From: Octopus sinensis
Lineage: Eukaryota
Length of the DNA stretch: 26,136 nucleotides
Assembly: GCF_006345805.1 (NCBI RefSeq)
Contig: NW_021835644.1
Coordinates: 1 to 26,136 of the forward strand
Direction: 5' to 3'
Part shown: positions 2,460 to 26,136 of the stretch, one piece after another
Layout: every line of letters begins with the position of its first letter
Numbering within the stretch: position 1 is the stretch's first letter
Translations under genes and position numbers: made by a program
Notes under the pieces: model-generated
Seen by the model: the letters and a program-made list of their open reading frames with translations, nothing else
Told to the model about the DNA's origin: nothing
The model's database searches: none

Positions 2460-5400
2460 AGAAACAAAAAAGGTTGAATAAAAAATTTCGAGGAAAAAAA
2501 AGTATTGTGAACACAAATGCAAAGCGAGGCACAAAAAGAAAATTTGTCTCTATAAAAATAATGTGAATACAAGACTACAATTGGACACAGGTAGTGACAT
2601 CACAATTATCAACAAGGATACATAGAAAAAAATAGGAAGGCCTACTTTGAAAAAATATTGTGAAAATGGTGAGAGGCATCTCAGGAAAACAATTAGGATT
2701 TTTGGACAAAAAGATTAGTGAGGTAACATTTCGTGGGAAAACTTTGGAAGCTAAAGTTTTTGTATCAAAAAATATGATGAACCTTTTTGGATAGAATTGT
2801 TTAATTTATGGAACCTCCCCATAAATAATTTTTGCAACAATGTAAACAGTTATAACGCCAGTAAATAAGGCATTGGAAGATTTAATAAAGAAATTGAAAA
2901 TGAATTTTCCTGATGTTTTTTCAGAAGAATTAGGTAGATGTACCAAGACAAAAGTAAAATTTCAAGTAAAAGAAAACTCCATACTTTAAACCGAAGAGAG
3001 CATTGAATCAAGTCAGTGAGGGATTAGATAGGCTAGAAAATCTGGGAGTTATAGAAAAAGTTGGCTATTCAGAATGGGCAGCACCAACTGTTTATGTAAA
3101 GAAAAACAATAACAAAATATGAGTATGTGTGAACTTTTCAACAGGTTTGAACGAATGTTTAAGGACAAGCCCAGAGGAAATTCTTGCGAAATTCAAAGGA
3201 GGAAAATTTTTCTCAAATTGGACTTGTCAGTTTTACAGTTACAAGTCAAGGAAGAATGTTTGAAATTATTAATGATAAACACTCATAAAGCTTTATATAA
3301 ATTCAATTCACTTCCTTTCAGGATAAAGGTGGCACCTAATATTTTCCAACAGGTGATGGGCATGATGCTTGCAGATATGGATTTTGCTGTAGCATATTTG
3401 GATGACATTATCATAAAAAGTGAGTCTAGGAACATGTTAAAATGGTTTTTGAGAAGATAAAGGAGTATGGATTCAAACTTAGCAAGAAAAAATGTGAATA
3501 TTTCATGCCAGAAATAAAGTATCTTCGGCAAGTTATCAATAAAAATGGTTACAGGCCAGATCCTTCCAGATTGACAACAATAAAAATATGCTTACCCCCA
3601 AAAATATTACAACATTACAAGTGTTCTTAGGGCTCGCAAACTATTTCCAAACATATATACCAATCACGCATGAGCTAAGTGCATCCCTAAACAACCAAGT
3701 GAAAAAAGGTGTTAAATGGTATTGGTCAAACAGGTATCAAAAAGAGTTTGAAGAAATTAAAAAAAGTTTTAACATCAGAACTGTCATTATTGCACTTTGA
3801 TCCAAATTTAAAAATAGTAGTAGTATCAGATGCTAGCAAAAGTGGTATAGGAGTGATAATTTTACACAAGTATGAAAATGGTAGCGTAAAACCCATTGCT
3901 TATGCTTCACATTCATTGTTGGCACTGAAAAAAAAACTACAGCCAGATTGAGAAGGAGGCATTAGCCATTATTTTTGTAGGGAAAAAATTTCATAAATTC
4001 ATACATGGAAGGGAATTCAGTCTGCAAACAGATCGCCGCCCATTATTCTCAATTTACAGATCAAAAAAAGGGTATCCTCACACATACAGCCAACTGATTG
4101 CAGGACTGGGGGATGATCCTGCTAAATCATGATTTTAAGATGGAATTTCTACCATTGGAAAAATTAGGACATGTGAATGGGCTGTCAAGATTGATTCCTA
4201 AATACGGTGAACCATTAGAGGACATTGTAATAGCAGCATTAAAAGACAAAATCGAAATAAAAAATATACTCTGCAATGTAGTACGTGAACTGCCTGTCAC
4301 TTTAGAAGAAATAAAAACTAAAGCAGAGAAGGATACATTCATAATAAAAATGGGAAAAAATAGTGAAGTTTGAAACAAATACAAAACTCATGTAACCAAG
4401 TGCAACACAGTTTTGAAATGGTATTCGATATGTGACAACATACTTCTGTATGCTCAGAGGGTTGTAATACCTGTTTCTTTGCATAAGAATTCAACGAGAA
4501 TCACGAGAATGAAAGCATTGATGCAAAGCTATGTTTACTGGCTGAATATGTATCAGGATTTTAAAAAAGTTAAAAGTTAAAAAAATATGTATCAGGATAT
4601 TAAAAAAGTTGCTGAAATCCTTCAGGGGTTGTACCCTGGCAGCAAAAGCATCACTTGTAAAAATTCAACCTTGGCCCAACAGTGACGTACCTTGGTCAAG
4701 ATTACACAGACTTTGCTGGACCATTAAATGGAGTGTATTGTCTAATAGTTGTAGATAGTTAAATGAAATGGCCAGAAATATGTAAATGTAGGAAGCTGAT
4801 CTCCAAAGTAATGATGGAATTTCTGGATGAAATTTTTGCATGATATGGCATCCCCAAACACTATAGTGTCTGATAATGGAATGCAGGTATTGTCAAAGGA
4901 AATTAATAACTTTTGCAAAATGCATGCATCTGAGATTGAATGGACTAGTGGAACGTTTTGTAGACATGTTTGAGGGCACTGAAAAAATCTAGTAATGAAC
5001 TACTAGCTGATACTGCATTAATGCAATTCTTAAGTGTCTACTGAATACCACCTATCTCCAACATCACATCATCTATGTTGCTGGCTGAACTAATGTTTGC
5101 GAGAAAGTCAGGTTAGTGTTTGACAAATTACTGGGAAGAAAAGAAAAGAAAAAAATAGAAACACTGAAAATAAGATGAAATACTTCAAAATTGCTGACAA
5201 GGCCTTTTAAAAAATATAGAGAAACAGAAAGAAAAGTTGGAAAGAAGGTATAATAAGTAAACGTTTAGGAAAAATAACGCACATGGTAAAAGATCATACA
5301 TGGGAATGCAAGAGGCAGTAATCAAACCAATGAGTACAGCGACTGGGATAAGAGAGCAAACAAAACTTTTGCACGTAGATCCAAAACAAAAGAAATATTC

Positions 5401-6458: not shown

Positions 6459-7377
6459 GGGACTGGCAATTGGAGTGCTGCCAGGCACTTCAGCTACTCT
6501 CTCGGGCGGGCAATGCCGAATTTCTATAGTGGGTTAGTGGAGGTTAAGTCCGAAGACGCCTTGGAGGAGACCCTGGGCTATGAGAAAAATCAGTTAATCA
6601 ACCTGTTCTGGAGAACTTTCGGGTCGAGGTATCTGGACAATTACCAGAAATCTCTGGCTTGGCAGTGCTTCTGTGTGGCGTTACCTGTTTGTGATAAACT
6701 GTCAAGGCACGGAAGTGCCGTCTAGCCGACATGTCTGAGGTGCGGGCAGAACAGGGAAACCGTCTTGCATGCATTTGTGGAGTGTCCGGAATTAACGAGA
6801 CTGATAGTTTTCGCAGAGCAACTGTTGTCATCGATGGGAAGAGTACAGCTATCAGCTGAATCTATCATCGAGATTGTGCCGCCTCCTTCCCTTAACAGGA
6901 AAAGGAAGGCTTGCTTATTCTGCATAGTAGCCATACTGAAAGAAACAGTATGGAAGACGCGTGTGAGAGGCATAGTGTTGGGTACCTTTGTATCCGGCTA
7001 GGGGTTGGTTAACTTTTTTAGTTACCACCTCAGTAATAAGATCAGGCTGGAGAAAAGGTACCTGTCACGAGACAGATTCATGAGAAGATGGAAGCCTGTG
7101 GCGAGGAAGCTGGGAGTGTTTGGCACCAGGTAAGTGGAAGCCAAAAACAGGAAAGAAAAAGCAATGGTGGTCGGATGCCTATCCTTCAGAGAAGCCATTA
7201 CAAATTTCATTTGTAATGAGCAACGCTTAAGTCAAAATTATAAACAAATTTATTAAATTATTGTATTTTTAAATTGTAAATATTTAATCACTATAGCTAC
7301 TTCACCCTTTTATGTTTGTCTGTTCTTGTTCGTCTTCTCTTTGTAATGCCTTCATGGCAAATATTTATGAAATAAAA
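6459..7377 (+). mobile_element. L1/Tx1-clade LINE, 5'-truncated 3' fragment (ORF2 C-terminus with zinc-binding motif, 3' UTR, AATAAA)
   Basis: One frame from 6513 to 7133 with two TAG stops: LAWQC...LPV.DKL.RHG...CLRCGQNRETVLHAFVEC...KETVWKTR...FMRRWK. This is the CxxC..H...C motif of the L1/Tx1 ORF2 tail. Ends ATGAAATAAAA. Confidence 0.8.
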
Positions 7378-7514
7378 TAGCTTGCTTCCCAACCACATGG
7401 ATCTGGGTTCAGTCCCACTCCGTGGCACCTTGGGCAAGTGTCTTCTATTATAGCCTCGGGCTGACCAAAGCCTTGTGTGTGAATTTGGTAGACGGAAACT
7501 GAAAGAAGCCCATC

Positions 7515-7568
<54 letters not shown>

Positions 7569-7757
7569 CTGTCCCTGCAACATCGCTTGAGAACCGATGC
7601 TAGTGTGTTTACGTCCCCGTAACTTATTGGTTCTGCAAAAGAGACCAATAGAATAAGTACTAGGCTTACAAAGAATAAGTCCTGGGGTCGATTTGCTCGA
7701 CTAAAGGCGGTGCTCCAGTGTGGCCACAGTAAAATAACTGAAACAAGTAAAAGTAAG
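7378..7757 (+). mobile_element. tRNA-derived SINE copy A, remainder, with internal (TA)n at ~7517-7558
   Basis: Resumes TAGCTTGCTTCCCAACCACATGG...GGTTCAGTCCC (B box) and is collinear with copies 12958-13350 and 20639-20987 to the CTGAAACAAGTAAAAG end. Confidence 0.92.
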
Positions 7758-10432: not shown

Positions 10433-10600
10433 CAGGCATTTTGTGGTTGAGAAGTTTGCTTCTCATGTAGTATCAGGTTCAGTCACACTGTTCAGCACCT
10501 TGGGCAAATGAATTCTACTGTTTCTCCTGACTAAACAAAGCTTTGTGAGTGAATTTGGTAGACATAAGATGGAAGAAGCCCATCGTATACGTGTGTGTTT
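10433..10600 (+). mobile_element. tRNA-derived SINE copy B, old and degenerate, 5' part only
   Basis: GGTTCAGTCAC...GCACCTTGGGCAA...AAAGCTTTGTGAGTGAATTTGGTAGAC...GAAGCCCATCGTATA aligns to the SINE body. Confidence 0.75.
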
Positions 10601-12400: not shown

Positions 12401-12957
12401 TGACTAGAAATTTGCATTCAGGTTACTGCTATTCTGTTTGGAGATAGAATTCATCTGGGGAAGGAGAATGTTTAAATACTTGTTGACTGAATTTTCATGC
12501 ATGTAGGCAGGAATCAAATGTCTCCTGACTTGTTTAGGAGGTTTGTTGCAGATAGGATATGCAGTTTTTCAGTTACTCACAGATTACATCTTTTGCCATG
12601 ACCATTATAGGTATTTGCTTTAGCTTAAATGCTCCTGGTGGGGTTGCTAGTTTAGTTGCTGACGACCAGACCATGGAACAGGTTATACTGGGCTACATGG
12701 TATCAGTAGCACTCGAGAGTGACTTGACTAATGTCAGGTCGCTCTCGAGTGACCTTGGTGAGGTGGGTGCTTGTTGAACACCCTATGGGACAAAAAGTAA
12801 GACCTGTCAAAGGGCAGAGGAACTGCAGTGTAGTCAATGGCCAGTCAACTATGTGTGTTTGTGGAGTGCTTGTGTATTGTGTATGTTGCATTTTGGACTC
12901 TGTGTGTGTGTATTGTATATACTGTGTTCTTTTTTTTTTTTTAATTGTATATATATA

Positions 12958-13350
12958 GGCGCAGGAGTGGCCGTCTGGTAAGTAGCCTGCTAACCAACCA
13001 CATGGTTCCGGGTTCAGTCCCACTGCGTGGCATCTTGGGCAAGTGTCTTCTGCTATAGCCCCGGGCCGACCAACGCCTTGTGAGTGGATTTGGTAGATGG
13101 AAACTGAAAGAAGCCTGTCGTATATATGTATATATATATATATATGTATGCGTGTGTGTGTTTGTCCCCCTAGCATTGCTTGACAACCGATGCCGGTGTG
13201 TTTACGTCTCCGTCACTTAGCGGTTCGGCAAAAGAGACCGATAGAATAAGTACTGGGCATACAAAGAATAAGTCTCGGGGTCGATTTGCGTGACTAAAGG
13301 CGGTGCTCCAGCATGGCCGCAGTCAAATGACTGAAACAAGTAAAAGAGAG
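12958..13350 (+). mobile_element. tRNA-derived SINE copy C, full length (octopus-type; family name needs Dfam/Repbase)
   Basis: A-box-like TGGCCGTCTGG, B-box-like GGTTCAGTCCC, CCTTGGGCAAG-type core, internal (TA)n/(TG)n, GTCGATTTGCGTGAC hairpin remnant, and a LINE-like 3' tail ending TAAAAGAG. Confidence 0.93.
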
Positions 13351-13479: not shown

Positions 13480-14675
13480 TGTATCCAAATCCGGAGTGGA
13501 GCCCCTAAGGTGGTTAGGTGATGAAGTCCATCATCTCTCCAGCAGCGCCTGCAATCCAGTTGTGGCTAGGATGTGTCATCCTGCGTCCCTCCTGGCTAGA
13601 TTGGCTGGACTGAGAGGGGGGTCTTGGGCTTGGGCAACCAAGGCCTCCATAGTTCTCTTGCCCAGGATTCAGTGACTCCACCCCGTCTACTTCTTCTTCT
13701 TCTTCCAAGTCCTTAGGCGATGGGCGAGTGGTGACAGTGGCAGGTGCAGGATGGCGCTGGGAATGCTTGCCATGGACCTGCACTCAGGTGGTCAGGGCAG
13801 AAGGGTCGTTCTGCAGCCTACCAGAGCAAGAGCATAGTTCGGCAGCCACTCTGACGACGGAGCAGCCCTCTTCAGGGATAGCACTGCTCCTCCACTGAGA
13901 GGGGAGGGTCTAGAAAAGGTGACCTAAAGAAAGCTCGCTTCATCTCATCCTGTCAGCATACCGCAGCTGACTGGTCATCTACCATGTGGTCGAAACTTGA
14001 AGGAAATACAAAAGAAGAACCCAAAATCGTCCTGCCGGAAAATCATTTTATGTGTTGGAGCCTGGAACATCAGGACACTCATGGGCAACCATAACTGTGA
14101 CAGACCAGAACATCGAACAGCACTTGTGGGTCGTGAACTGTAGAGATACAGTATTGATGTTGCTGCCCTCAGCGAGACACTCCTTGCCAACACTGGGGAG
14201 ATCACCGACGCTGGAGCTGGATACACTTTCTTTTGGTCAGAGAAGGCACCGGATGAAAGCAGGAGTTGGCTTTGCCATTCGCATCACCCTCGTGAAGAAC
14301 CTGGAGTCACTTCCAAGAGGAATCATCGACTGCCTGATGGTGATGAGAATATCTCTCCATGGTAAGATGCACCTGACACTCATCAGTGCTTATGCCCCCA
14401 CTGCGACCTACACTCTGGAGCATAGAGATCTGTTCTATCTACCTGGATGCACCCAAGGTCCAAAGCTTGTCAGGATTATCAAGTCATTTCATGATGGCAT
14501 GATGGGTCACATTGTGGAAAATGGAGATGTCTCTGATCCATTCTCGGTCTCCACTGGTGTGAAGCAAGGCTGTGTGATGGCTCCCACACTCTTCAACCTC
14601 ATGTTTACCACCACGCTCTTCCGTGCCCTGTCAAAGTCTGCTGTTGGTGTCACTATTCGCTAGAGATGTGACGGC
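13480..14675 (+). mobile_element. RTE-clade (BovB-like) LINE: 5' region, endonuclease N-terminus, large internal deletion, short RT segment
   Basis: VGAWNIRTL (14057-), IDVAALSET, GYTFFWS, AGVGFAI and LISAYAPT are APE motifs. After ...DLFY (14438) the frame jumps to PKLVRIIKSFHDGM...STGVKQGCVMAPTLFNL (RT). The 5' boundary is approximate. Confidence 0.88.
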
Positions 14676-15204
14676 CGATTCTTTGTGCGTGTATGTATGA
14701 GTATTTTGTGTGAGTGGGTTCATTTGCATATGCATATGTGTGAGTGTATGTGTGTGTACATGTGTATATGTGTGCGTGTGTATTTTGTGTGTGTGTGCAT
14801 GTGTATGTGTGTGAACGAGGAGTATATGTGTGCTTCCTTGCACATGTATGCATGTATGAGTGCATGTGTGTGGGGTTGTGAGTGTTAGGTATGTGCATGT
14901 GTGTGTATGTGTATGTAGGTATATATTGTGTGTGCATGTATGCGCATGCATATGTGTGCATTTGTATGTGTGCGTATGTGTCTGCATGTATGTATATATT
15001 GCGTGTATGTCTATATGTGTGTGTGAGTTTCTGTATGCGTGTGTGCCTGGAGTTTTGTGGTGGTATATGTGCGTTTCAGTGTGTGTGTGTGCTTATGTCC
15101 ATGTGTGTGTATCTGTATGAGTATGTTGTGTGTGTGGGAGGTATATGTGCATGGATGTGTATGCGTGTGGATGTATGTGTGTGTGTGTATGTATGTATGC
15201 ATAA
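14676..15204. repeat. ~530 bp imperfect compound (TG)/(TA)/(TGTA) microsatellite tract
   Basis: Directly visible. It is the source of the THTH/CVCV-rich ORFs in the track. Confidence 0.95.
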
Positions 15205-15922
15205 GTAAATTGGAGAGAGGAGTGGAATTTAGAGAGGAAAGAGATGAAGTGGCAGAGTTGTTCATGGTAGAGGGAAATGGCACCTATACAGTCGTTTCTA
15301 TAGCGATTGTATAGCTCTGGGGTTTGCCCAGAGAATTGGGTGAATACTTGGGCCTCAGTGTAACCAACATGGGGCCCATTCTTGTTCCCATCACGACCCC
15401 AGATAACATTGGTAGGTTTGTCCGGTGAACGTAAAGCAGTTGAGGGTGAGGATGAGTTCTGCCAGACTAAGAAGGATGGATGTGCTGGGTATGGGGTCAG
15501 GGTGATGGTCGAGGAAGTATTGGGAGAGCTTGGGGAATCACTGTATATAGGGATTTGATGTTCAAGATGAAGAGGAGGTGTTAGGAGCCAGGAAAAGGAA
15601 TTTAAGAGGCGAAGGGCGTGATTAGTGTCATGTATGTGAGATGGGAGGGCAGCAACTAAAGGGGACAGGATGCGGTCAAGGTATTTGGAAATGAGTTCAG
15701 TAGGGCAATTACAGGCAGAAATAATGGGACAGCCAGGGTTGTTGGGTTTATGTATTTTGGAAAGGAAATAGATGGTGGAAGTATGGGGTGTTCAGACGAT
15801 GAGGTTGGTGGCAGTGGGGAGAGAGCAGAAGAGGTCATGGATGGTGGACACGTGATGCTGGTTGGATGAGGTAGGGTTGGAAGAGATAGCCTTGAATTGG
15901 CTGAGTGCTTCCTCTCTGTTAC
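15205..15922 (-). mobile_element. Penelope-like element, reverse-transcriptase core fragment
   Basis: Minus-strand translation EALSQF...LPPTATNLIV...IYFLSKIHKPNNPGCPIISACNCPTELISKYLDRILSPLV...HDTNHAL...MGTRMGP...ELYNRYRNDCIGA...FHSSLQFTY. These are PLE RT motifs (LPKIHK, GxxMG, YIDD decayed to YRND). Confidence 0.88.
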
Positions 15923-16701
15923 CCTGCTATGTATTTGAAACTAAGAACAAAGTATCACTTAATAACTATGCTTGTGTGTTGGTTAATCTTTACTGGTATT
16001 CCAGCTTTTTTTATTTTCTTCTTTATTAGAGTTGATGAGCGCTCAGTTTATGTAGACTTTAAAAATAAGCAACACTCTTTATTACATATGAAACTATATC
16101 TGTTCTACCACCATCTCCTCCATTGTTGCCGCCGTCCTTTCATATTACTTTGACCGTGCTACCTTTTTTTACCATCCTTTCACCCTTTTCTCATTGATAT
16201 ACACCATCATCATCGTGATTTTGAGAAAAGAGTGGTTTCCTCATCAAACTTTTCTGTCGCTGCAAGAGATAAAAAAAATAATTAAAATAAAAAAAGTAGG
16301 GGACAGAGACAAAACAATAACTGGTTTACTGGCGACACAGATTTCATTTCATTGCCATGGCTCAAGATGAAGGCCAGCAGCAATCAGATCAGTTGGGAGA
16401 GAACTGCCTAAACAATTTCGAGAGTCAGTGCCTCCAAACACTGGATGCTGAGCCTAACATGGAGGAGGGATTGCAAACAGAAAGAGAATATGCTGCTCAA
16501 AAACTTGGGTTGGCTTTTCAGAATTCGGCCACTGCTATTGCTCACATGTATCAAGATGGACACCAAGGCTGTACTTTATGGGGTCCATTTCGAAATGTAG
16601 CTTTAGCAGTTACTGATATGTACAAAGATATGTTCTGAAGCTGTATTGATGTTGGTGTGCAGTGTGGTCAACAACACAGACCAAAGGATATTATTGCTTG
16701 G
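15923..16701 (+). pseudogene. HAPSTR1: Intronless, 3'-truncated copy of HAPSTR1/C16orf72 (upstream/5'UTR-like sequence plus N-terminal CDS, ATG at 16357, in-frame TGA at 16636-16638)
   Basis: FESQCL...QKLGLAFQNSATAIAHMYQD...TLWGPFRNVALAVTDMYKD MF* SCIDVGVQCGQQHRPKDIIAW aligns with recalled human WERQCL...QKLWHLFQNSATAVAQLYKD...SLWVPFQNAATAVTNLYKE...SFDIGIQIGYQRRNKDVLAW. Kozak context gccATGg. Homology stops at W (16699-16701). Left boundary approximate. Confidence 0.85.
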
Positions 16702-17570
16702 ACTCCACTTTTGTCTGCTGGCTTGAAAATGATGTCATTGTGGTGACAGAGGTTGCCAAGGGCAATCAATTCAGCACAGGTGAGGTTGGCCCAGAGAAAT
16801 CTTTTTTTGAAATTGGATCAGTCGGCCACTGCATTGCAGTCATGCACGAACAAGTCTAGGCTATGGAATTGGCCTGGAGGTAGCATGCAGTTGGATGGGT
16901 GCTGCTCCAGCTCTGAGAAGCAATCCCGATTGTTGTGACGCTGTGCAGACCTATGGAAAAATGAGCATAGTTTGATGCAGTGCAAGAACCGGCTGATGTT
17001 GGTGTGGGTCTCAAATTTGTTACATTGAGAGGCATGAAGTGGAGACCTCTGCTGGGAGTGAACGCTCAGCAGCGGACAGAGGGAGGTTGGGTGGTATAGT
17101 GACAACAGTGTGTGGGAGCAGAGTGGTGAGGTTGGGAAGAGGGGGTGCAGAGGTATGGAGGTGAGGGTTGGAATGGTTGGGTGGGGATGGGGGTAGGGGT
17201 GGGAATGTTCAAGACAGGGGCATCTGGGTGCGTGCAGGGGGTGTGGTGGATGCAGGAGGGGGAGTAGGCAGGTAGCTGAAGGGGCGGGTGTTGGAGTGTG
17301 TGAAGGGTTGAGGAGGCAGTGGAATTTTTTGTTTTTGTGTGTGTGAGGAAATTGTGGAGTTGGTGGTTGAGATTAAGAAGGAAGCGGAGAATATGTTGGG
17401 TGAAGAGCTGAGGGCAGAGGGAGGAGAGGTGGGCGTAATAAGCTACATTTAGACATAAAATACTTAAAATCTGGTGCAGTGGAACAAAAGTTAAGAGAAA
17501 AAGTGTATAGACCAAACTGGTTGACTGATAAGTAGTAATGCCTGACAATGACACTTTGAATCCACACCAT
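16702..17570 (-). mobile_element. Penelope-like element, N-terminal ORF part (same element as 15205-15922)
   Basis: Minus strand: LCPQLFTQHILRFL...Pro-rich linker...VVTIPPNLPLSAAERS...GLHF.P...ALGNLCHHNDIIFKPADKSG. In PLE ORFs the KPADKG motif directly precedes the EAxRQL segment found at ~15900. Confidence 0.85.
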
Positions 17571-19145: not shown

Positions 19146-19260
19146 ACTTTCTCACTTATAGAGTGTTAAACTAATAGACCTGTTTGTTGTTTTCACACCT
19201 GTCTTTGTCTTTTGTTTTTTTTGTAAATTCCAACTATGTATGTATATACATGTATATGTA

Positions 19261-19452
19261 AGTGTGTCTGTGTTTGCCCCCCTCCCCACCATCACTTGAC
19301 AACCGATGTTGGTGTGTTTACGTCCCTGTTTGGCAAAAGAGACTGCTAGAATAAGTACTAGTCTTACAAAGAATAAGTCTTGGTGTTGATTTGTTCGACT
19401 AAAAGTGATGGTCCAGCATGGCTGCAGTCAAATGACTGAAACAAGTAAAAGA
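19261..19452 (+). mobile_element. tRNA-derived SINE copy D, 3' half only
   Basis: CTTGACAACCGATGTTGGTGTGTTTACGTCCC...AGAATAAGTACTAG...CAGTCAAATGACTGAAACAAGTAAAAGA matches the SINE 3' half. Confidence 0.88.
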
Positions 19453-20638
19453 ATATATATATATATGTTTGGCCAACCATCTTTCTACATTTAAATATAT
19501 TCATGAATGTAATACTACAGATCTTAGTCAACTAATTTGACATCTGAAAGACTATAATAAACAATTTTCTTTAGATTGAGAAATTTTGTCAACATCATTT
19601 CCCTATGATAAAGGGAAATCTTTTGGGTTTTGTTGTACGGACGATCAACTATTTATCCTTTTTCCCAAACATGCACTGGTCAACACCTATAAAGAACATG
19701 TTTACAGGTGTTTACATTGGTAAAAACACATTTTCAGCTATTTCAAATAATATCTGCCCCCTTACCTAATATTATCTGTAATATACACTTTTTGCTTCTC
19801 ATTCCATACCCCCTATTCTTTCCTTTATCTTTTCTATCCATTTGTCATTCACCCTGTATTTGTTTATACCACTGTTACTCCTCTAATTCTCTTTCTCTCC
19901 TTCTTCTCTTCTTCTTTGACGTCAAATTTCTTAAGTTTTTTCAAATTACTAGCGTTCCCTATCCACTTTTGTTTTCCATATATATTATAGTTTCTTGCAT
20001 CTGTAAAAATGACTTATTGGTGAGCTCTGTTGTTTATAATCTCTTCCTTGATGAAATTGATACATTTTTCCACATTATTCTTCCTCTCAGATTTATTTTA
20101 ATGTATCAGTCAAAACATATGTCGGTGATATGGTGAATTATCACCCATGCAAGTGGAATTACTAATTTTGTAGTCGCTTATGTGACATTTCGGTCCCCTG
20201 GTAAATATTCCTCTGAATCTTTCCTTGTAAATTAAACATTTATATATGTATATGTGTGTGTGTGTGTATGTATGTATACCTATATAGAAATGAGAATGTG
20301 CCTCTGTCTGTCTGTGAATCCCTAATACTCAAGAACTACACAACTGATTTCATTCAAATTTTACACATGCCAGTGTCATGGGCTAAAACAATTTTCAACT
20401 TCTTGCATAATGCGAGCCCAGAGCAGTCTCTTATCTCTTACACTATTTCAGTATTACGTGTCAAACGGGAAACAATAACATCTCTACATTGTAATGTGTG
20501 ATACTTTCAGTTTAATACTTTCACTATTAATAGTAAAACTATTAATGAAACTATTATCTCATATATATCTCACATGTATATACATACATACATACATACA
20601 TACATGTATATTATATATATATATTATGTACGTATATA

Positions 20639-20987
20639 GGTGCAGAAGTGTCTGTGTGGTAAGTAGCTTGCTTACCAACCACATGGTTCCGAGTTCAGTC
20701 CCACTGTGTGGCACCTTGGGCAAGTGTCTTCTGCAATAGCCTTGGACCGAACAAAACCTTGTGAGTGGATTTGCTAGACGGTAATTGAAAGACACCTGTC
20801 GTATATATATGTGTATGTGTGTTGGTGTGTTTACGTCCCTGTAACGTAGCAGTTTGGCAAAAGAGACCGATAGAATAAGTATTAGGCTTACAAAGAATAA
20901 GTCCCAGGGTTGATTTGTTTGAATAAAAAGGCATGCTCCAGCATGGCCACAGTCAAATGACTGAAACAAATAAAAGAATAAAAAAGA
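20639..20987 (+). mobile_element. tRNA-derived SINE copy E, near full length with an internal deletion
   Basis: GGTGCAGAAGTGTCTGTGTGGTAAGTAGCTTGCTTACCAACCACATGG... to CAGTCAAATGACTGAAACAAATAAAAGAATAAAA. Confidence 0.92.
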
Positions 20988-20988
20988 A

Positions 20989-21021
<33 letters not shown>

Positions 21022-23468: not shown

Positions 23469-26136
23469 TTTATTTTATTTTATTTTATCTAGTTTCAGCT
23501 CACGAGCTGTGGCCATGCTGGGGCACCGCCATTTGGTGTTGCTACATGATTTTACTTCACGAATGCTTTTTAGCAATTGCTATTTGGTGCATGAGAGAGT
23601 TCGATGCACCTCCTGCCGTGAATTTGTTCATATTGGTCACCTGACAGGAAAAGATCCAGTTTTATTTTAAAGACATCTGCATCCACCCCATGCAGGTTTC
23701 TCAGGTCTTTCGAGAGGATATTGAAGAGCTGTGGGCCTCAAGCCCAGGCTATCACTTGTCCTACATCTTGATGGCAAATTTGGAGTCCTTGGCACTATGC
23801 AGTGGCACCCAAATTTAGTATTTGTGTAACTCTCGATGCCAAAGTTTGGGACAAGTCCTTCCAGGATCTTCCAGATGTATATTATGGCAGATCTTTCTCG
23901 CCTACGCTCTAAGGAATAGAGTCTTAATCTCTTGAGTCTTTCCCTGTAGCTTATATGCTGCACAGAGGCTATCTTGTTTATGTAACTTTGTTGGATCGCC
24001 TCAAGTTCTGTGATTAACTTGACACTGGATGGTGACCATAGCTGAGAGCAATAGTCAAAGTGGCTTCGGACAAGTGTCCTCCAGAGGACCCTCATGGTTT
24101 CCTGGTCTCTTGTTCTAAAGGTTCTAAGAATCCATCCGTCAGACGCCTACATTTCATTGCTAATTTAGTAACATGCACATGAAAGGTTGCATCATCACTC
24201 ATGTAAATACCCAGGTCTCGCACTAATTGTGCCTCTGGGATCGCAATCCCTGCTGGTCCAGTGTATTTATTGGGTATTGCATTTAGTTTTGCATGCTGAT
24301 AGCACAAAGCTTGAAACTTTTCAGCATTGAACTGCATGCTATTCTTTTCAGCCCACTTGTATATTTTGTCCAGCTCACATTGCAGGTGCATAGTGTCTTC
24401 AGGGTTCTGTATTACCTGTGAAACTTTTGTATCATCTGCATAACTTGTGATCGTGGCTCTCTGCGTGGCTGAGGGTATGTCTGAGAAGGCCATTATGAAC
24501 AGTAGTGGTCCCAAAACAGTGCCTTGTGGAACACCGCTCACTATTTGCGTGCTAATGGAAGTGACCCCATTGGCTACTACCACCTGACTTCTATCCTTCA
24601 GAAAGTCATGAAGCCATTCTCCCAGTTTTCCAACTATGTTGAGATCACGCAGTTTGTGACATATCATTCCATGATCGACTTTATCAAAGGCCTTTGCAAA
24701 GTCGAGATATATCACTTCCACATTTGAGTGGTTGAGCAGTCGTTTCAGCACCCAGTCATTGTGTTGTAGGAGCTGAGTTAAGCAGTTTCTCCCTGGTCGG
24801 AAACCATGTTAGGTGTCAGGCAGCAAGTCATTTTCTTCAAGGAAGGTGATTAGTTTCCTTCTGACTATTCGTTCCATGACCTTGCTGATGTGTGAGGTGA
24901 GAGAGATAGGTCTGTAGTTCTTGGCCTCTGCTCTTCTACCTCCTTTATGAATAAGGCATATTTTACCTTCCTTCAGTTTTCTTGGAAGTTTGCCAGCTGC
25001 AAGGAAGCTCTGAAAGAGGAACTGCAGTGGTCTTGCTAGGACTCTCTTACATACTTTTAGAATGATTCCTGGGAATTTATTGGGGCCAGTTGTTGAGTTT
25101 ATTTTCATTTCATCTATAGCCTTTATTACATCGTCTTCCCTTATATTGATGTAATCAATCATTGCTACCTCTGATTTTATATCTGCTGTAGTAAAGAAGT
25201 CAGTGGGATTGCTGACTTGAAAATACCATAGAGGTGGAGTGAAAATACTCTTGAATTGCTCATTGGATTTCCTGTGAGTGTACCATCTTTTTCAAGGAGT
25301 GGCCCTATCCTACGGTGCACCGTAGCTGTTTCTTTGGCATACCCGTAGAAAGCTCTGGGGTTAGATTTTTTGTTGTCTATAGCCCAGGCTTCTTTGTCTG
25401 CTCTTTCCTTTTCATGGGAGAGTTGCAGACATTTTTCAATTTCCAACAGTTTTATTTTCTGGCAGAACTTTTCACTGCTTTCAATTTGTTTGTTTAGGTG
25501 ATTTGAAATTTTTGTACACCGTCTCATTAAAATTTTCCTCTCTCTGGGGATTTTGTTCTTGTGTACAGTGGCCTTTCTCTCTGGGACACATTTGTAGCAT
25601 ATGGCTTGCATTACAGACATGAATTGTTGAAGCTTCACATCGATGTCTGGCGAGGAGAGACATTTAGGCCAGTTTTGTTTGAGGATCTCTTTCTCAATTT
25701 GTTTCGAGTTTGCCTTATGGAAGTTCAAGCTGGAAAGATTCTGAGGGTTTCTTGTAGGCTGCATGTCCATGCTTTCCTTTGGCCCGTACATGGTCAGCTC
25801 TACCATGTTGTGATCCGAGAGTAGTGTCGGTGTCACTTTCACATTATGGATGAGATCCATATTATTTGTGAAGCAGAGATCCAGTGTGTTACCTGCCCTG
25901 GTTGGTTGGAGTATTACTTGCTCCATGTACAGGGTATTGATGAGGTTCAGGAGGGACCTTGCCTGTCCTCGTTCACATCTTGTCATTCCTGGGAGAGAAA
26001 GGCCCTCGGGCCATCTGATATTGGGTAGATTGAAGTCTCCCATAGAAGTACACTTATGTGTTGTTCTAATGTGATTAGAACTTCTTCTATTTTATAAGGC
26101 AGTCTTCAAACTTGCTTACATGGCTGGGGCATCTGG
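23469..26136 (-). mobile_element. CR1-group (Jockey superfamily) LINE: ORF2 from APE C-terminus through RT to 3' UTR and (TAAAA)n tail; continues beyond the window
   Basis: MGDFNLPNIRW, GNTLDLCFTN (APE); NYRPISLTSHISKVMERIV, YLDFAKAFDKVDHG, GVPQGTVLGPLLF, YADD (RT); YSLERRRER (C-terminus). Long ORFs 25177-26043, 24809-25162, 24092-24751 and 23667-24095 are broken by a few stops and frameshifts. Confidence 0.95.

What the first reader, a model, noticed from the sequence alone, without database searches (positions are those of the whole stretch)
15900..16720. HAPSTR1 gene fragment embedded antisense inside a Penelope ORF, without poly(A) or TSD
Seen: the PLE ORF breaks after KPADKSG (16702) and resumes at about REEALSQF (~15922). 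Only about 10 codons of the usual AVVVW... segment are missing, so the ~780-bp insert replaced a small piece of target. The insert carries ~430 nt of upstream sequence and ~115 uninterrupted HAPSTR1 codons, and stops mid-domain at KDIIAW with no A-tail. Established: ordinary LINE-made retrocopies are 5'-truncated and polyadenylated, the opposite of this; mammals independently evolved the HAPSTR2 retrogene. Inference: either RT template switching or RNA-templated break repair, a DNA-level copy of a large first exon, or cargo carried by a PLE subfamily. The last would be host-gene transduction by a Penelope element.
Basis: partly seen in the sequence, partly recalled or inferred. Interest (0 to 1): 0.75.

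Follow-up and report, generated by a model that had tools for sequence, protein, structure and literature searches.

The report
HAPSTR1 cDNA fragment inside dead Penelope
About 780 bp copied from a spliced HAPSTR1 messenger RNA, cut off at its 3' end, sits backwards inside a decayed Penelope-like retrotransposon of an unidentified (probably molluscan) genome; it is most likely a one-off scar of DNA-break repair with reverse-transcribed RNA, a known kind of event and not shown to be gene capture by the element.

Summary
On the minus strand, a decayed Penelope-like element (PLE) reading frame stops right after its DKG motif (KPADKSG, 16724-16704) and resumes at (N)REEALSQ (15920 downward). Between 8 and 11 codons (24-33 bp) are lost. 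In between, on the plus strand, lie 434 nt of leader-like sequence and 115 HAPSTR1/TAPR1 codons (PF15251, E=7e-26). All HAPSTR1 matches end at 16701, in mid-domain. There is no poly(A) and no target-site duplication.

One correction: the 115 codons carry an in-frame TGA at codon 94.

New result: the fragment is spliced. The closest relative I could find has a phase-1 intron after codon 66 (G|GTAGGT, longer than 2.7 kb) and a second phase-1 intron before exon 3 (...TTTTTCAG|AT). The window reads straight through both positions and ends inside exon 3. This shows an RNA origin and refutes a DNA copy of a large first exon plus promoter.

Best explanation (0.45): a 3'-truncated cDNA was used as a patch at a break in an already resident PLE copy (class-2 templated insertion / endonuclease-independent retroposition). 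Rivals are an ordinary retrocopy later trimmed by a deletion, RT template switching, a DNA copy of an older retrocopy, and PLE cargo. Copy number and relative age could not be tested because the source genome is not in any collection. The locus is an ordinary pseudogene.

The parts
16702..17112 (-). PLE reading frame, N-terminal part, from TVVTIPPNLPLSAAE to the DKG motif (KPADKSG). It has one frameshift (about 17056/17033) and one in-frame stop.
   Evidence: tblastn with P0003/P0004/P0007 gives frames -1 then -2; alignment A1; the DKG motif is diagnostic of PLEs (PMC8557442).
17113..17560 (-). C-rich, G-poor low-complexity stretch upstream of the recognisable PLE frame. It may be the decayed 5' part of the element; its extent is uncertain.
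   Evidence: 162-aa P/T/S-rich ORF; 7.5% G on the sense strand; no match to the N-termini of homologues.
15201..15922 (-). PLE reverse-transcriptase part, from (N)REEALSQ to RYRNDC (decayed YIDD) and FHSSLQFTY. It has at least 3-4 frameshifts and one in-frame stop. It is cut off at a microsatellite; the thumb and the GIY-YIG endonuclease are absent.
   Evidence: tblastn frames -2/-3/-1/-2; translation.
15923..16356 (+). 434 nt between the PLE and the HAPSTR1 start codon. It is a presumed mRNA leader, but only the proximal part is weakly similar to the relative's upstream region. 15923-16113 is of unknown origin. An A-rich run lies at 16272-16299.
   Evidence: There is no repeat elsewhere in the window. 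The only Rfam match was below threshold, and I take it as chance (20 bits against a gathering score of 60, E=0.1).
16357..16555 (+). HAPSTR1 exon 1 coding part (codons 1-66 plus the first base of codon 67).
   Evidence: 79% nt / 78% aa identity to exon 1 of L001. L001's exon ends ...TAT CGA G|GTAGGT at the matching base.
16556..16627 (+). HAPSTR1 exon 2 equivalent (72 nt, codons 67-90 plus one base), joined to exon 1 and exon 3 with no intron.
   Evidence: 45 exon-1-only ORFs from different 50%-identity clusters break at ..YK/R-G. Vertebrate exon-2 ORFs are bounded as |DRVCQQ...NLYK|G.
16628..16701 (+). First 25 codons of HAPSTR1 exon 3, ending at KDIIAW in mid-exon. An in-frame TGA lies at 16636-16638.
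   Evidence: In L007 (same sample as L004) the acceptor is ...TTTTTCAG|ATAGT... and exon 3 continues past TGG with GCCAAAAAGAAACGG for about 70 more codons. The last 60 nt are 85% identical.
16699..16704 (.). Junction between the truncated 3' end of the HAPSTR1 copy and the PLE. There is no poly(A). At most 1-4 nt could belong to either side.
   Evidence: reading of the codons TGG|ACT against the PLE's gga gtc.
15918..15930 (.). Junction between the far end of the leader-like sequence and the resuming PLE frame.
   Evidence: The PLE similarity is clear from aac aga gag gaa gca (15920 downward).
14660..15200 (.). Impure (CA/TG)-rich microsatellite that ends the PLE copy. A LINE fragment follows at about 13990-14663 (+).

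Best explanation
This is a dead, one-off retro-insertion. A spliced HAPSTR1 mRNA was reverse-transcribed from an internal point in exon 3 towards its 5' end. The resulting cDNA of about 780 nt (exons 1 and 2, 25 codons of exon 3, plus leader) was joined into a chromosomal break inside an already resident Penelope-like element copy. The break had lost 24-33 bp. Because priming was internal and joining was by end-joining rather than target-primed integration, there is no poly(A) tail and no target-site duplication. The piece then decayed: a stop at codon 94 and radical replacements at conserved Trp and Gln residues.

Shown: spliced RNA origin, 3' truncation in mid-exon, small target loss, and absence of a tail and of a duplication. 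Inferred: that the break came first and the cDNA was a repair patch, that the PLE copy was already in place, and which reverse transcriptase made the cDNA (unknown; LINE and PLE RTs both exist in this genome).
For: (1) The insert is spliced. The window runs through intron position A, which in the closest relative reads CGA G|GTAGGT with no exon 2 in the 2.7 kb that follow. It also runs through intron position B, the acceptor TTTTTCAG|AT in L007, which comes from the same sample as L004. Position A is shared by 45 exon-1-only ORFs from distinct clusters.
(2) The copy ends in mid-exon 3. All HAPSTR1 matches end at 16701, whereas the relative's exon goes on for about 70 codons.
(3) There is no A-run and no flanking direct repeat.
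(4) Only 8-11 PLE codons are missing and the flanks are collinear.
(5) This set of features (no TSD, no poly(A), microdeletion, templates that include spliced cDNAs) defines class-2 templated sequence insertions, which are likened to endonuclease-independent retroposition (PMC5110952).
(6) The antisense orientation rules out simple RNA-to-RNA template switching during first-strand synthesis (logic from the sequence).
(7) dN/dS against the relative's exon 1 is 0.06 with pS 0.70. Most of the divergence therefore arose under selection in the parental gene, and the copy's neutral phase is short.
Against: The order of events is not shown. Decay of the PLE and of the insert cannot be told apart. At positions conserved in at least 90% of homologues, the PLE has 13 of 78 changed and HAPSTR1 has 1 of 13. 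The PLE has at least 5 frameshifts in about 1170 nt and the insert has none in 345 nt, where about 1.5 would be expected.

The exact junction bases, and so any microhomology or filler, cannot be read without the PLE family consensus and the parental mRNA. The origin of 15923-16113 is unknown. A two-step history (normal retrocopy, then a deletion) gives the same end state. The source genome could not be searched for further copies.
Confidence: 0.45

Rival explanations
1. Two-step history. An ordinary polyadenylated retrocopy made by a LINE, with a target-site duplication, landed in the PLE copy. A later deletion removed its 3' part, the poly(A) tail, one duplication copy and a few tens of bp of PLE.
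For: It gives the same end state. The neighbourhood has clearly been reshaped: the PLE lacks its 3' half, and a microsatellite and a LINE fragment abut it. An APE-type LINE with long ORF pieces lies in the window. Canonical retrocopies are far commoner than break-repair patches, at least in mammals (my own knowledge).
Against: It needs a deletion of a kilobase or more whose far end fell only about 30-45 bp beyond the retrocopy, which I estimate at a few per cent. LINEs outside the L1 type usually recognise their own 3' ends and make few processed pseudogenes (my own knowledge). No remnant of the 3' part is in the window.
Confidence: 0.2
2. Template switching while this PLE copy was being made. 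During second-strand synthesis the polymerase left the PLE cDNA, copied HAPSTR1 mRNA up to its 5' end, and returned to the PLE template about 30 nt further on. The chimera would then have been born at integration.
For: The antisense orientation and the 5'-ward extent fit second-strand synthesis. Non-LTR RTs are known to jump between templates (PMC8857657, listed; not read). A purified PLE protein cleaves and extends both DNA strands in vitro (PMC11167929). The decay levels of the PLE and the insert are not distinguishable.
Against: It needs two precise switches, out and back to nearly the same point on the same template, on a DNA-to-RNA-to-DNA path. No such PLE chimera was found in the literature searched. 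In vitro, PLE reverse transcription starts at defined sites in its own RNA. First-strand switching is excluded by orientation.
Confidence: 0.1
3. A DNA-level copy of an older processed HAPSTR1 pseudogene located elsewhere in the genome. A DNA fragment was captured at a break, or replication-based template switching occurred, and some of that pseudogene's flank came along.
For: It would explain splicing without a direct RNA step. It would also explain why 15923-16113 resembles nothing upstream of the relative's gene. Class-2 insertions also use DNA templates.
Against: It requires an extra, unobserved locus. The copy begins upstream of the start codon and runs 5'-ward for 434 nt, as expected for a cDNA run to the mRNA end.
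Confidence: 0.1
4. The HAPSTR1 piece is cargo of a PLE subfamily (host-gene transduction), carried along in many copies.
For: None beyond the physical linkage. It could not be tested because the genome is not available.
Against: The insert is internal rather than terminal, and it is antisense. It removes the conserved A.VVW segment just after the DKG motif, so the carrier cannot encode its own RT. There is a single copy in the window. No junction match turned up in the one collection that could be scanned.
Confidence: 0.03
5. A DNA-level duplication of the parental first exon with its promoter.
For: The fragment starts upstream of the ATG and lacks a tail.
Against: It reads through two intron positions that are occupied in the closest relative and are widely conserved.
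Confidence: 0.02

Closest known systems
Class-2 templated sequence insertions / endonuclease-independent (ENi) retroposition at DNA breaks (Onozawa & Aplan, PMC5110952; Morrish et al. 2002 as cited there)
   Same: No target-site duplication, no poly(A), a small deletion of the target, and a template that can be a spliced cDNA. The insert is a fragment, not a whole transcript.
   Different: Those were described in human cells and human polymorphisms. Here the host is an invertebrate, probably a mollusc, and the event is old. Junction microhomology or filler could not be read. At about 780 bp the insert may be on the long side (my own knowledge; not checked).
LINE-made processed pseudogenes (canonical retrocopies)
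   Same: An intron-less copy of a host mRNA that is dead on arrival.
   Different: Canonical copies keep the 3' end with a poly(A) tail, have target-site duplications and tend to be 5'-truncated. This one is the reverse.
Mammalian HAPSTR2 retrogene (PMC9834230)
   Same: The same parental gene family, and an origin by reverse transcription of a HAPSTR1 transcript.
   Different: HAPSTR2 is preserved and functional in mammals (abstract of PMC9834230); that it encodes a whole protein is my own knowledge. This copy is independent, covers only profile positions 1-100 of 249, carries a stop codon, and is in an invertebrate.
Chimeric retrocopies made by RT template jumping (for example U6-L1 or mRNA-L1 chimeras; from my own knowledge)
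   Same: Two unrelated transcripts end up joined in one insertion.
   Different: Those chimeras join the parts head-to-tail in the same orientation, at the 5' end of the first template, and keep a poly(A) and a duplication. Here the host piece is antisense, internal, and flanked on both sides by the same element.
TE-mediated gene capture and transduction (L1 3' transduction, Pack-MULEs, Helitrons; from my own knowledge)
   Same: A host gene fragment physically inside a transposable element.
   Different: Transduced or captured fragments are carried in multiple copies and lie at or between element termini. No second copy is known here, and the fragment disrupts the element's RT.

Membership tests
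Penelope-like element (the host of the insert) | RT related to PLE RTs, with the N-terminal DKG motif | tested here: met
   E=2.6e-75 to proteins of PLE architecture. KPADKSG aligns with KPADKGG. The DKG motif is named as diagnostic in PMC8557442. RT motifs are recognisable but decayed (YIDD has become YRND).
Penelope-like element (the host of the insert) | C-terminal GIY-YIG endonuclease with two Cys between GIY and YIG | tested here: not met
   It is present in the homologues: P0048 scores 22.7 bits against a cut-off of 22.6, P0014 scores 21.8, and the motif reads VIYCITCTLC..LYIGETG. It is absent from this copy, which is cut off at about 15201. The copy is a truncated relic.
Penelope-like element (the host of the insert) | pLTR / hammerhead ribozyme motif | tested here: not met
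   No Rfam family reached its gathering score anywhere in the window. The terminal parts of the element are not preserved.
HAPSTR1 / TAPR1-like (PF15251) | Match to the family profile above the curated cut-off | tested here: met
   91.9 bits against a cut-off of 27, E=7.2e-26. The best full-length relative is 54% identical, in a cluster whose named members are HAPSTR1-like proteins of Saccostrea.
HAPSTR1 / TAPR1-like (PF15251) | Complete, open reading frame | tested here: not met
   It covers only profile positions 1-100 of 249, has a TGA at codon 94, and ends at 16701.
Processed (mRNA-derived) copy | Absence of the parental introns | tested here: met
   Two intron positions that are occupied in the closest relative are read through. 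The source species' own gene could not be examined.
Canonical LINE-made retrocopy | 3' poly(A) tail and target-site duplication | tested here: not met
   There is no A-run at 16701/16702 and no bracketing direct repeat.
Class-2 templated insertion / ENi-type break repair | No TSD, no poly(A), microdeletion of the target | tested here: met
   The target lost 24-33 bp.
Class-2 templated insertion / ENi-type break repair | Microhomology or non-templated bases at the junctions | not testable with these tools
   This needs the PLE family consensus and the parental mRNA of the source species. With the relative as a proxy, at most 1-4 nt at 16701-16704 are ambiguous.
TE cargo / transduction | Several copies sharing the same TE-cargo junctions | not testable with these tools
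   The source genome is absent from all collections. There is a single copy in the window.

The most novel reading that the evidence does not exclude
The Penelope machinery itself made the insertion. Either a PLE endonuclease cut a resident PLE copy and the PLE reverse transcriptase, priming from the cut end, copied a host mRNA; or the RT jumped onto the mRNA during second-strand synthesis of this very copy. That would be a first documented case of host-mRNA capture by a Penelope-like element, and the chimera might have spread as a non-autonomous subfamily.
Probability: 0.1. Interest if true: 0.6.

Novelty: new member of a known kind. Interest (0 to 1): 0.25.

Why it matters
The practical result is that the fragment is a pseudogene and should not be annotated as a HAPSTR1 gene or exon. 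It is also not evidence that Penelope-like elements transduce host genes.

It is a clean invertebrate example of a 3'-truncated, tail-less, spliced cDNA insertion. Such insertions are documented mainly in human cells. A genome-wide count of them in this species would show how often reverse-transcribed RNA patches breaks outside mammals, and which reverse transcriptase supplies the cDNA. If the PLE machinery proved responsible, that would bear on how these telomerase-related elements prime and switch templates.

Tried and rejected
(1) Looking for the source genome, the parental gene or further chimeric copies. Exact look-ups of three window ORFs found nothing. The 5.8-billion-protein search found only a relative's exon 1. 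Two exact-pattern scans of metagenome contigs, one with the junction 24-mer and one with a conserved exon-1 23-mer, found nothing. Copy number and the parental 5' end therefore remain untested.

(2) Naming the relative's species from its run accessions in the literature gave no hits.

(3) Relative age of the PLE and the insert from changes at conserved residues. A first estimate with 10 homologues (24 of 87 changed) looked higher than for HAPSTR1. With 36 non-redundant homologues it fell to 13 of 78, against 1 of 13 for HAPSTR1. The test is inconclusive. Frameshift counts are likewise underpowered.

(4) Homology of the 434-nt leader to the relative's upstream region. The proximal 257 nt rank 9th of 132 controls and the distal 177 nt show nothing. 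BLAST gave only low-complexity hits.

(5) A small-RNA partner such as U6 in the insert. Rfam in E-value mode found nothing credible.

(6) The idea that the fragment ends at an exon boundary was rejected. The relative's exon 3 continues about 70 codons past KDIIAW.

(7) G-to-A hypermutation as the cause of the G-poor PLE strand was rejected. The strand is C-rich, not A-rich.
Full report
WHAT IS THERE. The window is AT-rich eukaryotic DNA full of decayed transposable elements and microsatellites. On the minus strand, 17112-16702 and 15926-15201 encode the two halves of one reverse-transcriptase frame. A search with a frame-corrected translation found 78 homologues. The best has E=2.6e-75, 43% identity and 97% coverage. 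The longer ones combine RVT_1 with a C-terminal GIY-YIG domain: P0048 scores 22.7 bits against a cut-off of 22.6, P0014 scores 21.8, and two cysteines lie between GIY and YIG. That is the architecture of endonuclease-bearing Penelope-like elements (PMC8557442).

In alignment A1 the window reads ...NDIIFKPADKSG | REEALSQ..., where the homologues have KPADKGG-A.VVWR.DLY(Q/K)-(Q/K)EA.RQ. So the frame breaks directly after the PLE-diagnostic DKG motif and 8-11 residues (24-33 bp) are missing. The copy is old. It has at least five frameshifts, two in-frame stops and a decayed catalytic YIDD (now YRND). It has no thumb or endonuclease part, because it is cut off at about 15201 by a microsatellite followed by a LINE fragment.

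THE INSERT. Between the two halves, on the plus strand, 16357-16701 translates to 115 codons that hit Pfam PF15251 (TAPR1-like, that is HAPSTR1/C16orf72) with E=7.2e-26, covering profile positions 1-100 of 249. An exhaustive search of 1.84 billion representatives gave 174 homologues. The best full-length one is 54% identical and belongs to a cluster named 'HUWE1-associated protein modifying stress responses-like' in the oysters Saccostrea cucullata and S. echinata. From this I infer, weakly, that the source is a mollusc or another lophotrochozoan.

All HAPSTR1 queries stop matching exactly at 16701 (KDIIAW), and no other piece of the gene is in the window. There is no A-run at that end and no direct repeat brackets the insert. 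First, the codons are interrupted by an in-frame TGA at 16636-16638 (codon 94). Second, the HAPSTR1 origin of the 434 nt upstream of the ATG is not established.

THE KEY TEST: SPLICED OR NOT. The only close relative in the 5.8-billion-protein collection is P0001, an 88-residue ORF found on 13 contigs from several sequencing runs. It is exon 1 of a genomic HAPSTR1 gene read into its intron. At the DNA level the match to the window is 79% over 181 nt, and it ends at ...ATG TAT CGA G|GTAGGTTTCC, a textbook donor in phase 1. No exon 2 lies in the 2.7 kb that follow. The window continues at that very base with AT GGA CAC CAA GGC..., which is the next part of the protein.

The intron position is not a quirk of one species. 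Among the representatives, 45 short ORFs from different 50%-identity clusters match only up to this point and continue '..LYK/R-G' plus unrelated residues. That is what a G|GT read-through gives.

A profile search with the second half of the fragment then found P0269. It comes from the same run (ERR3431203) as one of the exon-1 contigs. It is exon 3 of the same gene, again read through on both sides. Its DNA shows ...TTTTTTTTTATTTTTCTTTGCTAAATTTTTCAG|ATAGTATAG..., a polypyrimidine tract and acceptor, again in phase 1. The exon runs on past ...ATTATTGCTTGG with GCCAAAAAGAAACGG... for about 70 more codons to a CAAG|GTCAGT donor. The last 60 nt of the window's copy are 85% identical to it.

The window therefore carries exon 1 (16357-16555), a 72-nt exon 2 (16556-16627) and the first 25 codons of exon 3 (16628-16701). 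They are joined without introns, and the copy stops in mid-exon. It refutes a DNA-level copy of one large first exon plus promoter. One caveat remains: the gene of the source species itself could not be examined, so the argument rests on the closest relative and on wide conservation of the first intron.

AGE AND STATE. Against the relative's exon 1, pS is 0.70 (saturated) and pN is 0.11, giving dN/dS = 0.06. Most of the divergence therefore arose under purifying selection in the functional gene lineages. The copy's own neutral phase is comparatively short, below roughly 0.1 substitutions per site.

The copy does show relaxed constraint. Two conserved Trp are replaced (W17C and W50G), and PFQN has become PFRN. 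The TGA aligns with an AGA (Arg) codon of the relative, so it is one substitution away. The copy is also 9 nt shorter at the start of exon 3. The relative has an AG exactly 9 nt inside the exon, so an alternative acceptor or a lineage-specific indel would both explain the difference.

I tried to date the insert relative to the PLE from changes at residues conserved in at least 90% of non-redundant homologues. The PLE has 13 of 78 changed and HAPSTR1 has 1 of 13. The frameshift counts are at least 5 in about 1170 nt against 0 in 345 nt, where about 1.5 would be expected. Neither difference is significant, so the order of events is not settled by these data.

THE LEADER. 16300-16356 shows scattered matches to the relative's sequence just upstream of its ATG (AACAATA.C, CTGGCG, AGATT). 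The proximal 257 nt as a whole score better against the syntenic segment than most control segments, ranking 9th of 132. 15923-16113 resembles nothing. There is no repeat in the window, no credible Rfam family and no match in the relative's contigs. With synonymous sites saturated, no conservation of untranslated sequence is expected, so this neither supports nor contradicts a 434-nt leader. An A-rich run at 16272-16299 leaves open that the distal part comes from a second RNA.

MECHANISM. The features are: a spliced template, truncation at an internal point of the mRNA, extension towards the mRNA's 5' end, no tail, no duplication, and loss of a few tens of bp of target. Together they match class-2 templated sequence insertions. 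That review describes them as lacking duplications and poly(A), as showing microdeletion and microhomology, as using spliced cDNAs among other templates, and as resembling endonuclease-independent retroposition at a double-strand break (PMC5110952).

In that reading, the minus-strand 3' end at about 16702 primed on, or was ligated to, a cDNA of the mRNA, and the far end was joined at about 15922.

Orientation matters. Because the host piece is antisense to the element, a switch between two RNA templates during first-strand synthesis of the PLE is excluded. Only a DNA-to-RNA-to-DNA excursion during second-strand synthesis would fit, with a return to the same template about 30 nt further on. That is possible but less economical.

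A normal tailed retrocopy could have been trimmed later by a deletion that happened to end 30-45 bp into the PLE. The region has clearly been rearranged, and an APE-type LINE with long ORF pieces lies 7 kb away. But the required coincidence is of the order of a few per cent.

A DNA-level copy of an older retrocopy located elsewhere would also fit, and it would explain the unmatched distal leader.

Cargo of a PLE subfamily has nothing in its favour. The piece is internal and antisense, it destroys a conserved RT segment, and only one copy is seen.

My estimates are: break-repair patch 0.45; retrocopy plus deletion 0.20; template switching 0.10; DNA copy of an older retrocopy 0.10; cargo 0.03; exon-plus-promoter DNA copy 0.02; the rest for assembly error and unforeseen histories.

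WHAT IS KNOWN, AND NOVELTY. HAPSTR1 has given rise to a preserved, functional retrogene (HAPSTR2) in mammals (PMC9834230). The copy here is independent, partial and dead.

PLE biochemistry is only beginning to be studied. A purified Poseidon-clade protein cuts and extends both strands of a PLE-derived target, and it starts reverse transcription at defined internal sites of its own RNA (PMC11167929). This keeps a PLE-driven origin conceivable, but it gives no sign that foreign mRNAs are used. A literature search for PLE chimeras or template switching found nothing relevant.

I file the locus as a new member of a known kind, a break-repair-type or otherwise truncated processed pseudogene. It happens to lie in a dead Penelope-like element.

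LIMITS. The source genome is not in any collection available here. Copy number, the parental gene, the transcription start, the PLE consensus and the empty site all remain to be checked. These checks are listed as next steps and would settle the choice among the explanations.

Noticed in passing
window 7375-7753, 12946-13347, 19235-19466, 20627-20999, 10476-10598: A SINE-like dispersed repeat of about 380 bp occurs in at least five copies (70-84% identical). ARAGORN finds no tRNA and Rfam finds no family, so its family is unknown.
   Followed up: partly
window 23667-26043 (-): An APE-type LINE with long ORF pieces (Exo_endo_phos_2 at 25177-26043; RVT_1 with E=4e-19 at 24092-24751). It is much less decayed than the PLE and is a possible source of reverse transcriptase in this genome.
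   Followed up: partly
window 13990-15200: A LINE fragment on the plus strand (weak RVT_1) abuts an impure (CA/TG)-rich microsatellite of about 550 bp. The microsatellite ends the PLE copy after RT motif 5. The PLE thumb and GIY-YIG parts are nowhere in the window.
   Followed up: partly
window 3119-3460 (+): An RT fragment with a YLDDIII motif (RVT_1, E=6e-7), probably from an LTR-type retroelement.
   Followed up: no
window 15200-15922 and 17106-17560 (-): The sense strand of the PLE is strikingly G-poor and C-rich (G 12% and 7.5%, C 36% and 42%). The insert between the two stretches is not. Many changes at conserved codons are of the CpG-decay type (R to H, R to C, D to N). The cause of the skew (family composition or low-complexity expansion) is not resolved.
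   Followed up: partly
window 16272-16299 (+): An A-rich run (ATAAAAAAAATAATTAAAATAAAAAAAG) lies 57 nt upstream of the HAPSTR1 ATG. It could be part of the leader, or the tail of a second RNA picked up by an end-to-end template jump.
   Followed up: partly
window 16628-16650 (+); L007 915-947: The start of exon 3 is 9 nt shorter than in the relative. The relative has an AG exactly 9 nt inside the exon, a possible tandem acceptor. The window's TGA aligns with the relative's AGA codon.
   Followed up: partly
proteins P0144, P0148, P0154, P0302-P0314, P0127: HAPSTR1 intron positions differ between lineages. Read-through ORFs of mammals, and one of a spider, run from the start codon past the first position and break only after ..NLYK. 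Other ORFs, which resemble the mammalian protein but carry no source names, are bounded on both sides as a separate 27-codon exon 2, as in the mollusc-like relative. This suggests loss of the first intron in some lineages.
   Followed up: no
protein P0254: A 102-aa 'DUF4588 domain-containing protein, partial' is labelled Listeria monocytogenes in NCBI, on a 309-bp contig. It is almost certainly eukaryotic contamination of a bacterial assembly.
   Followed up: no
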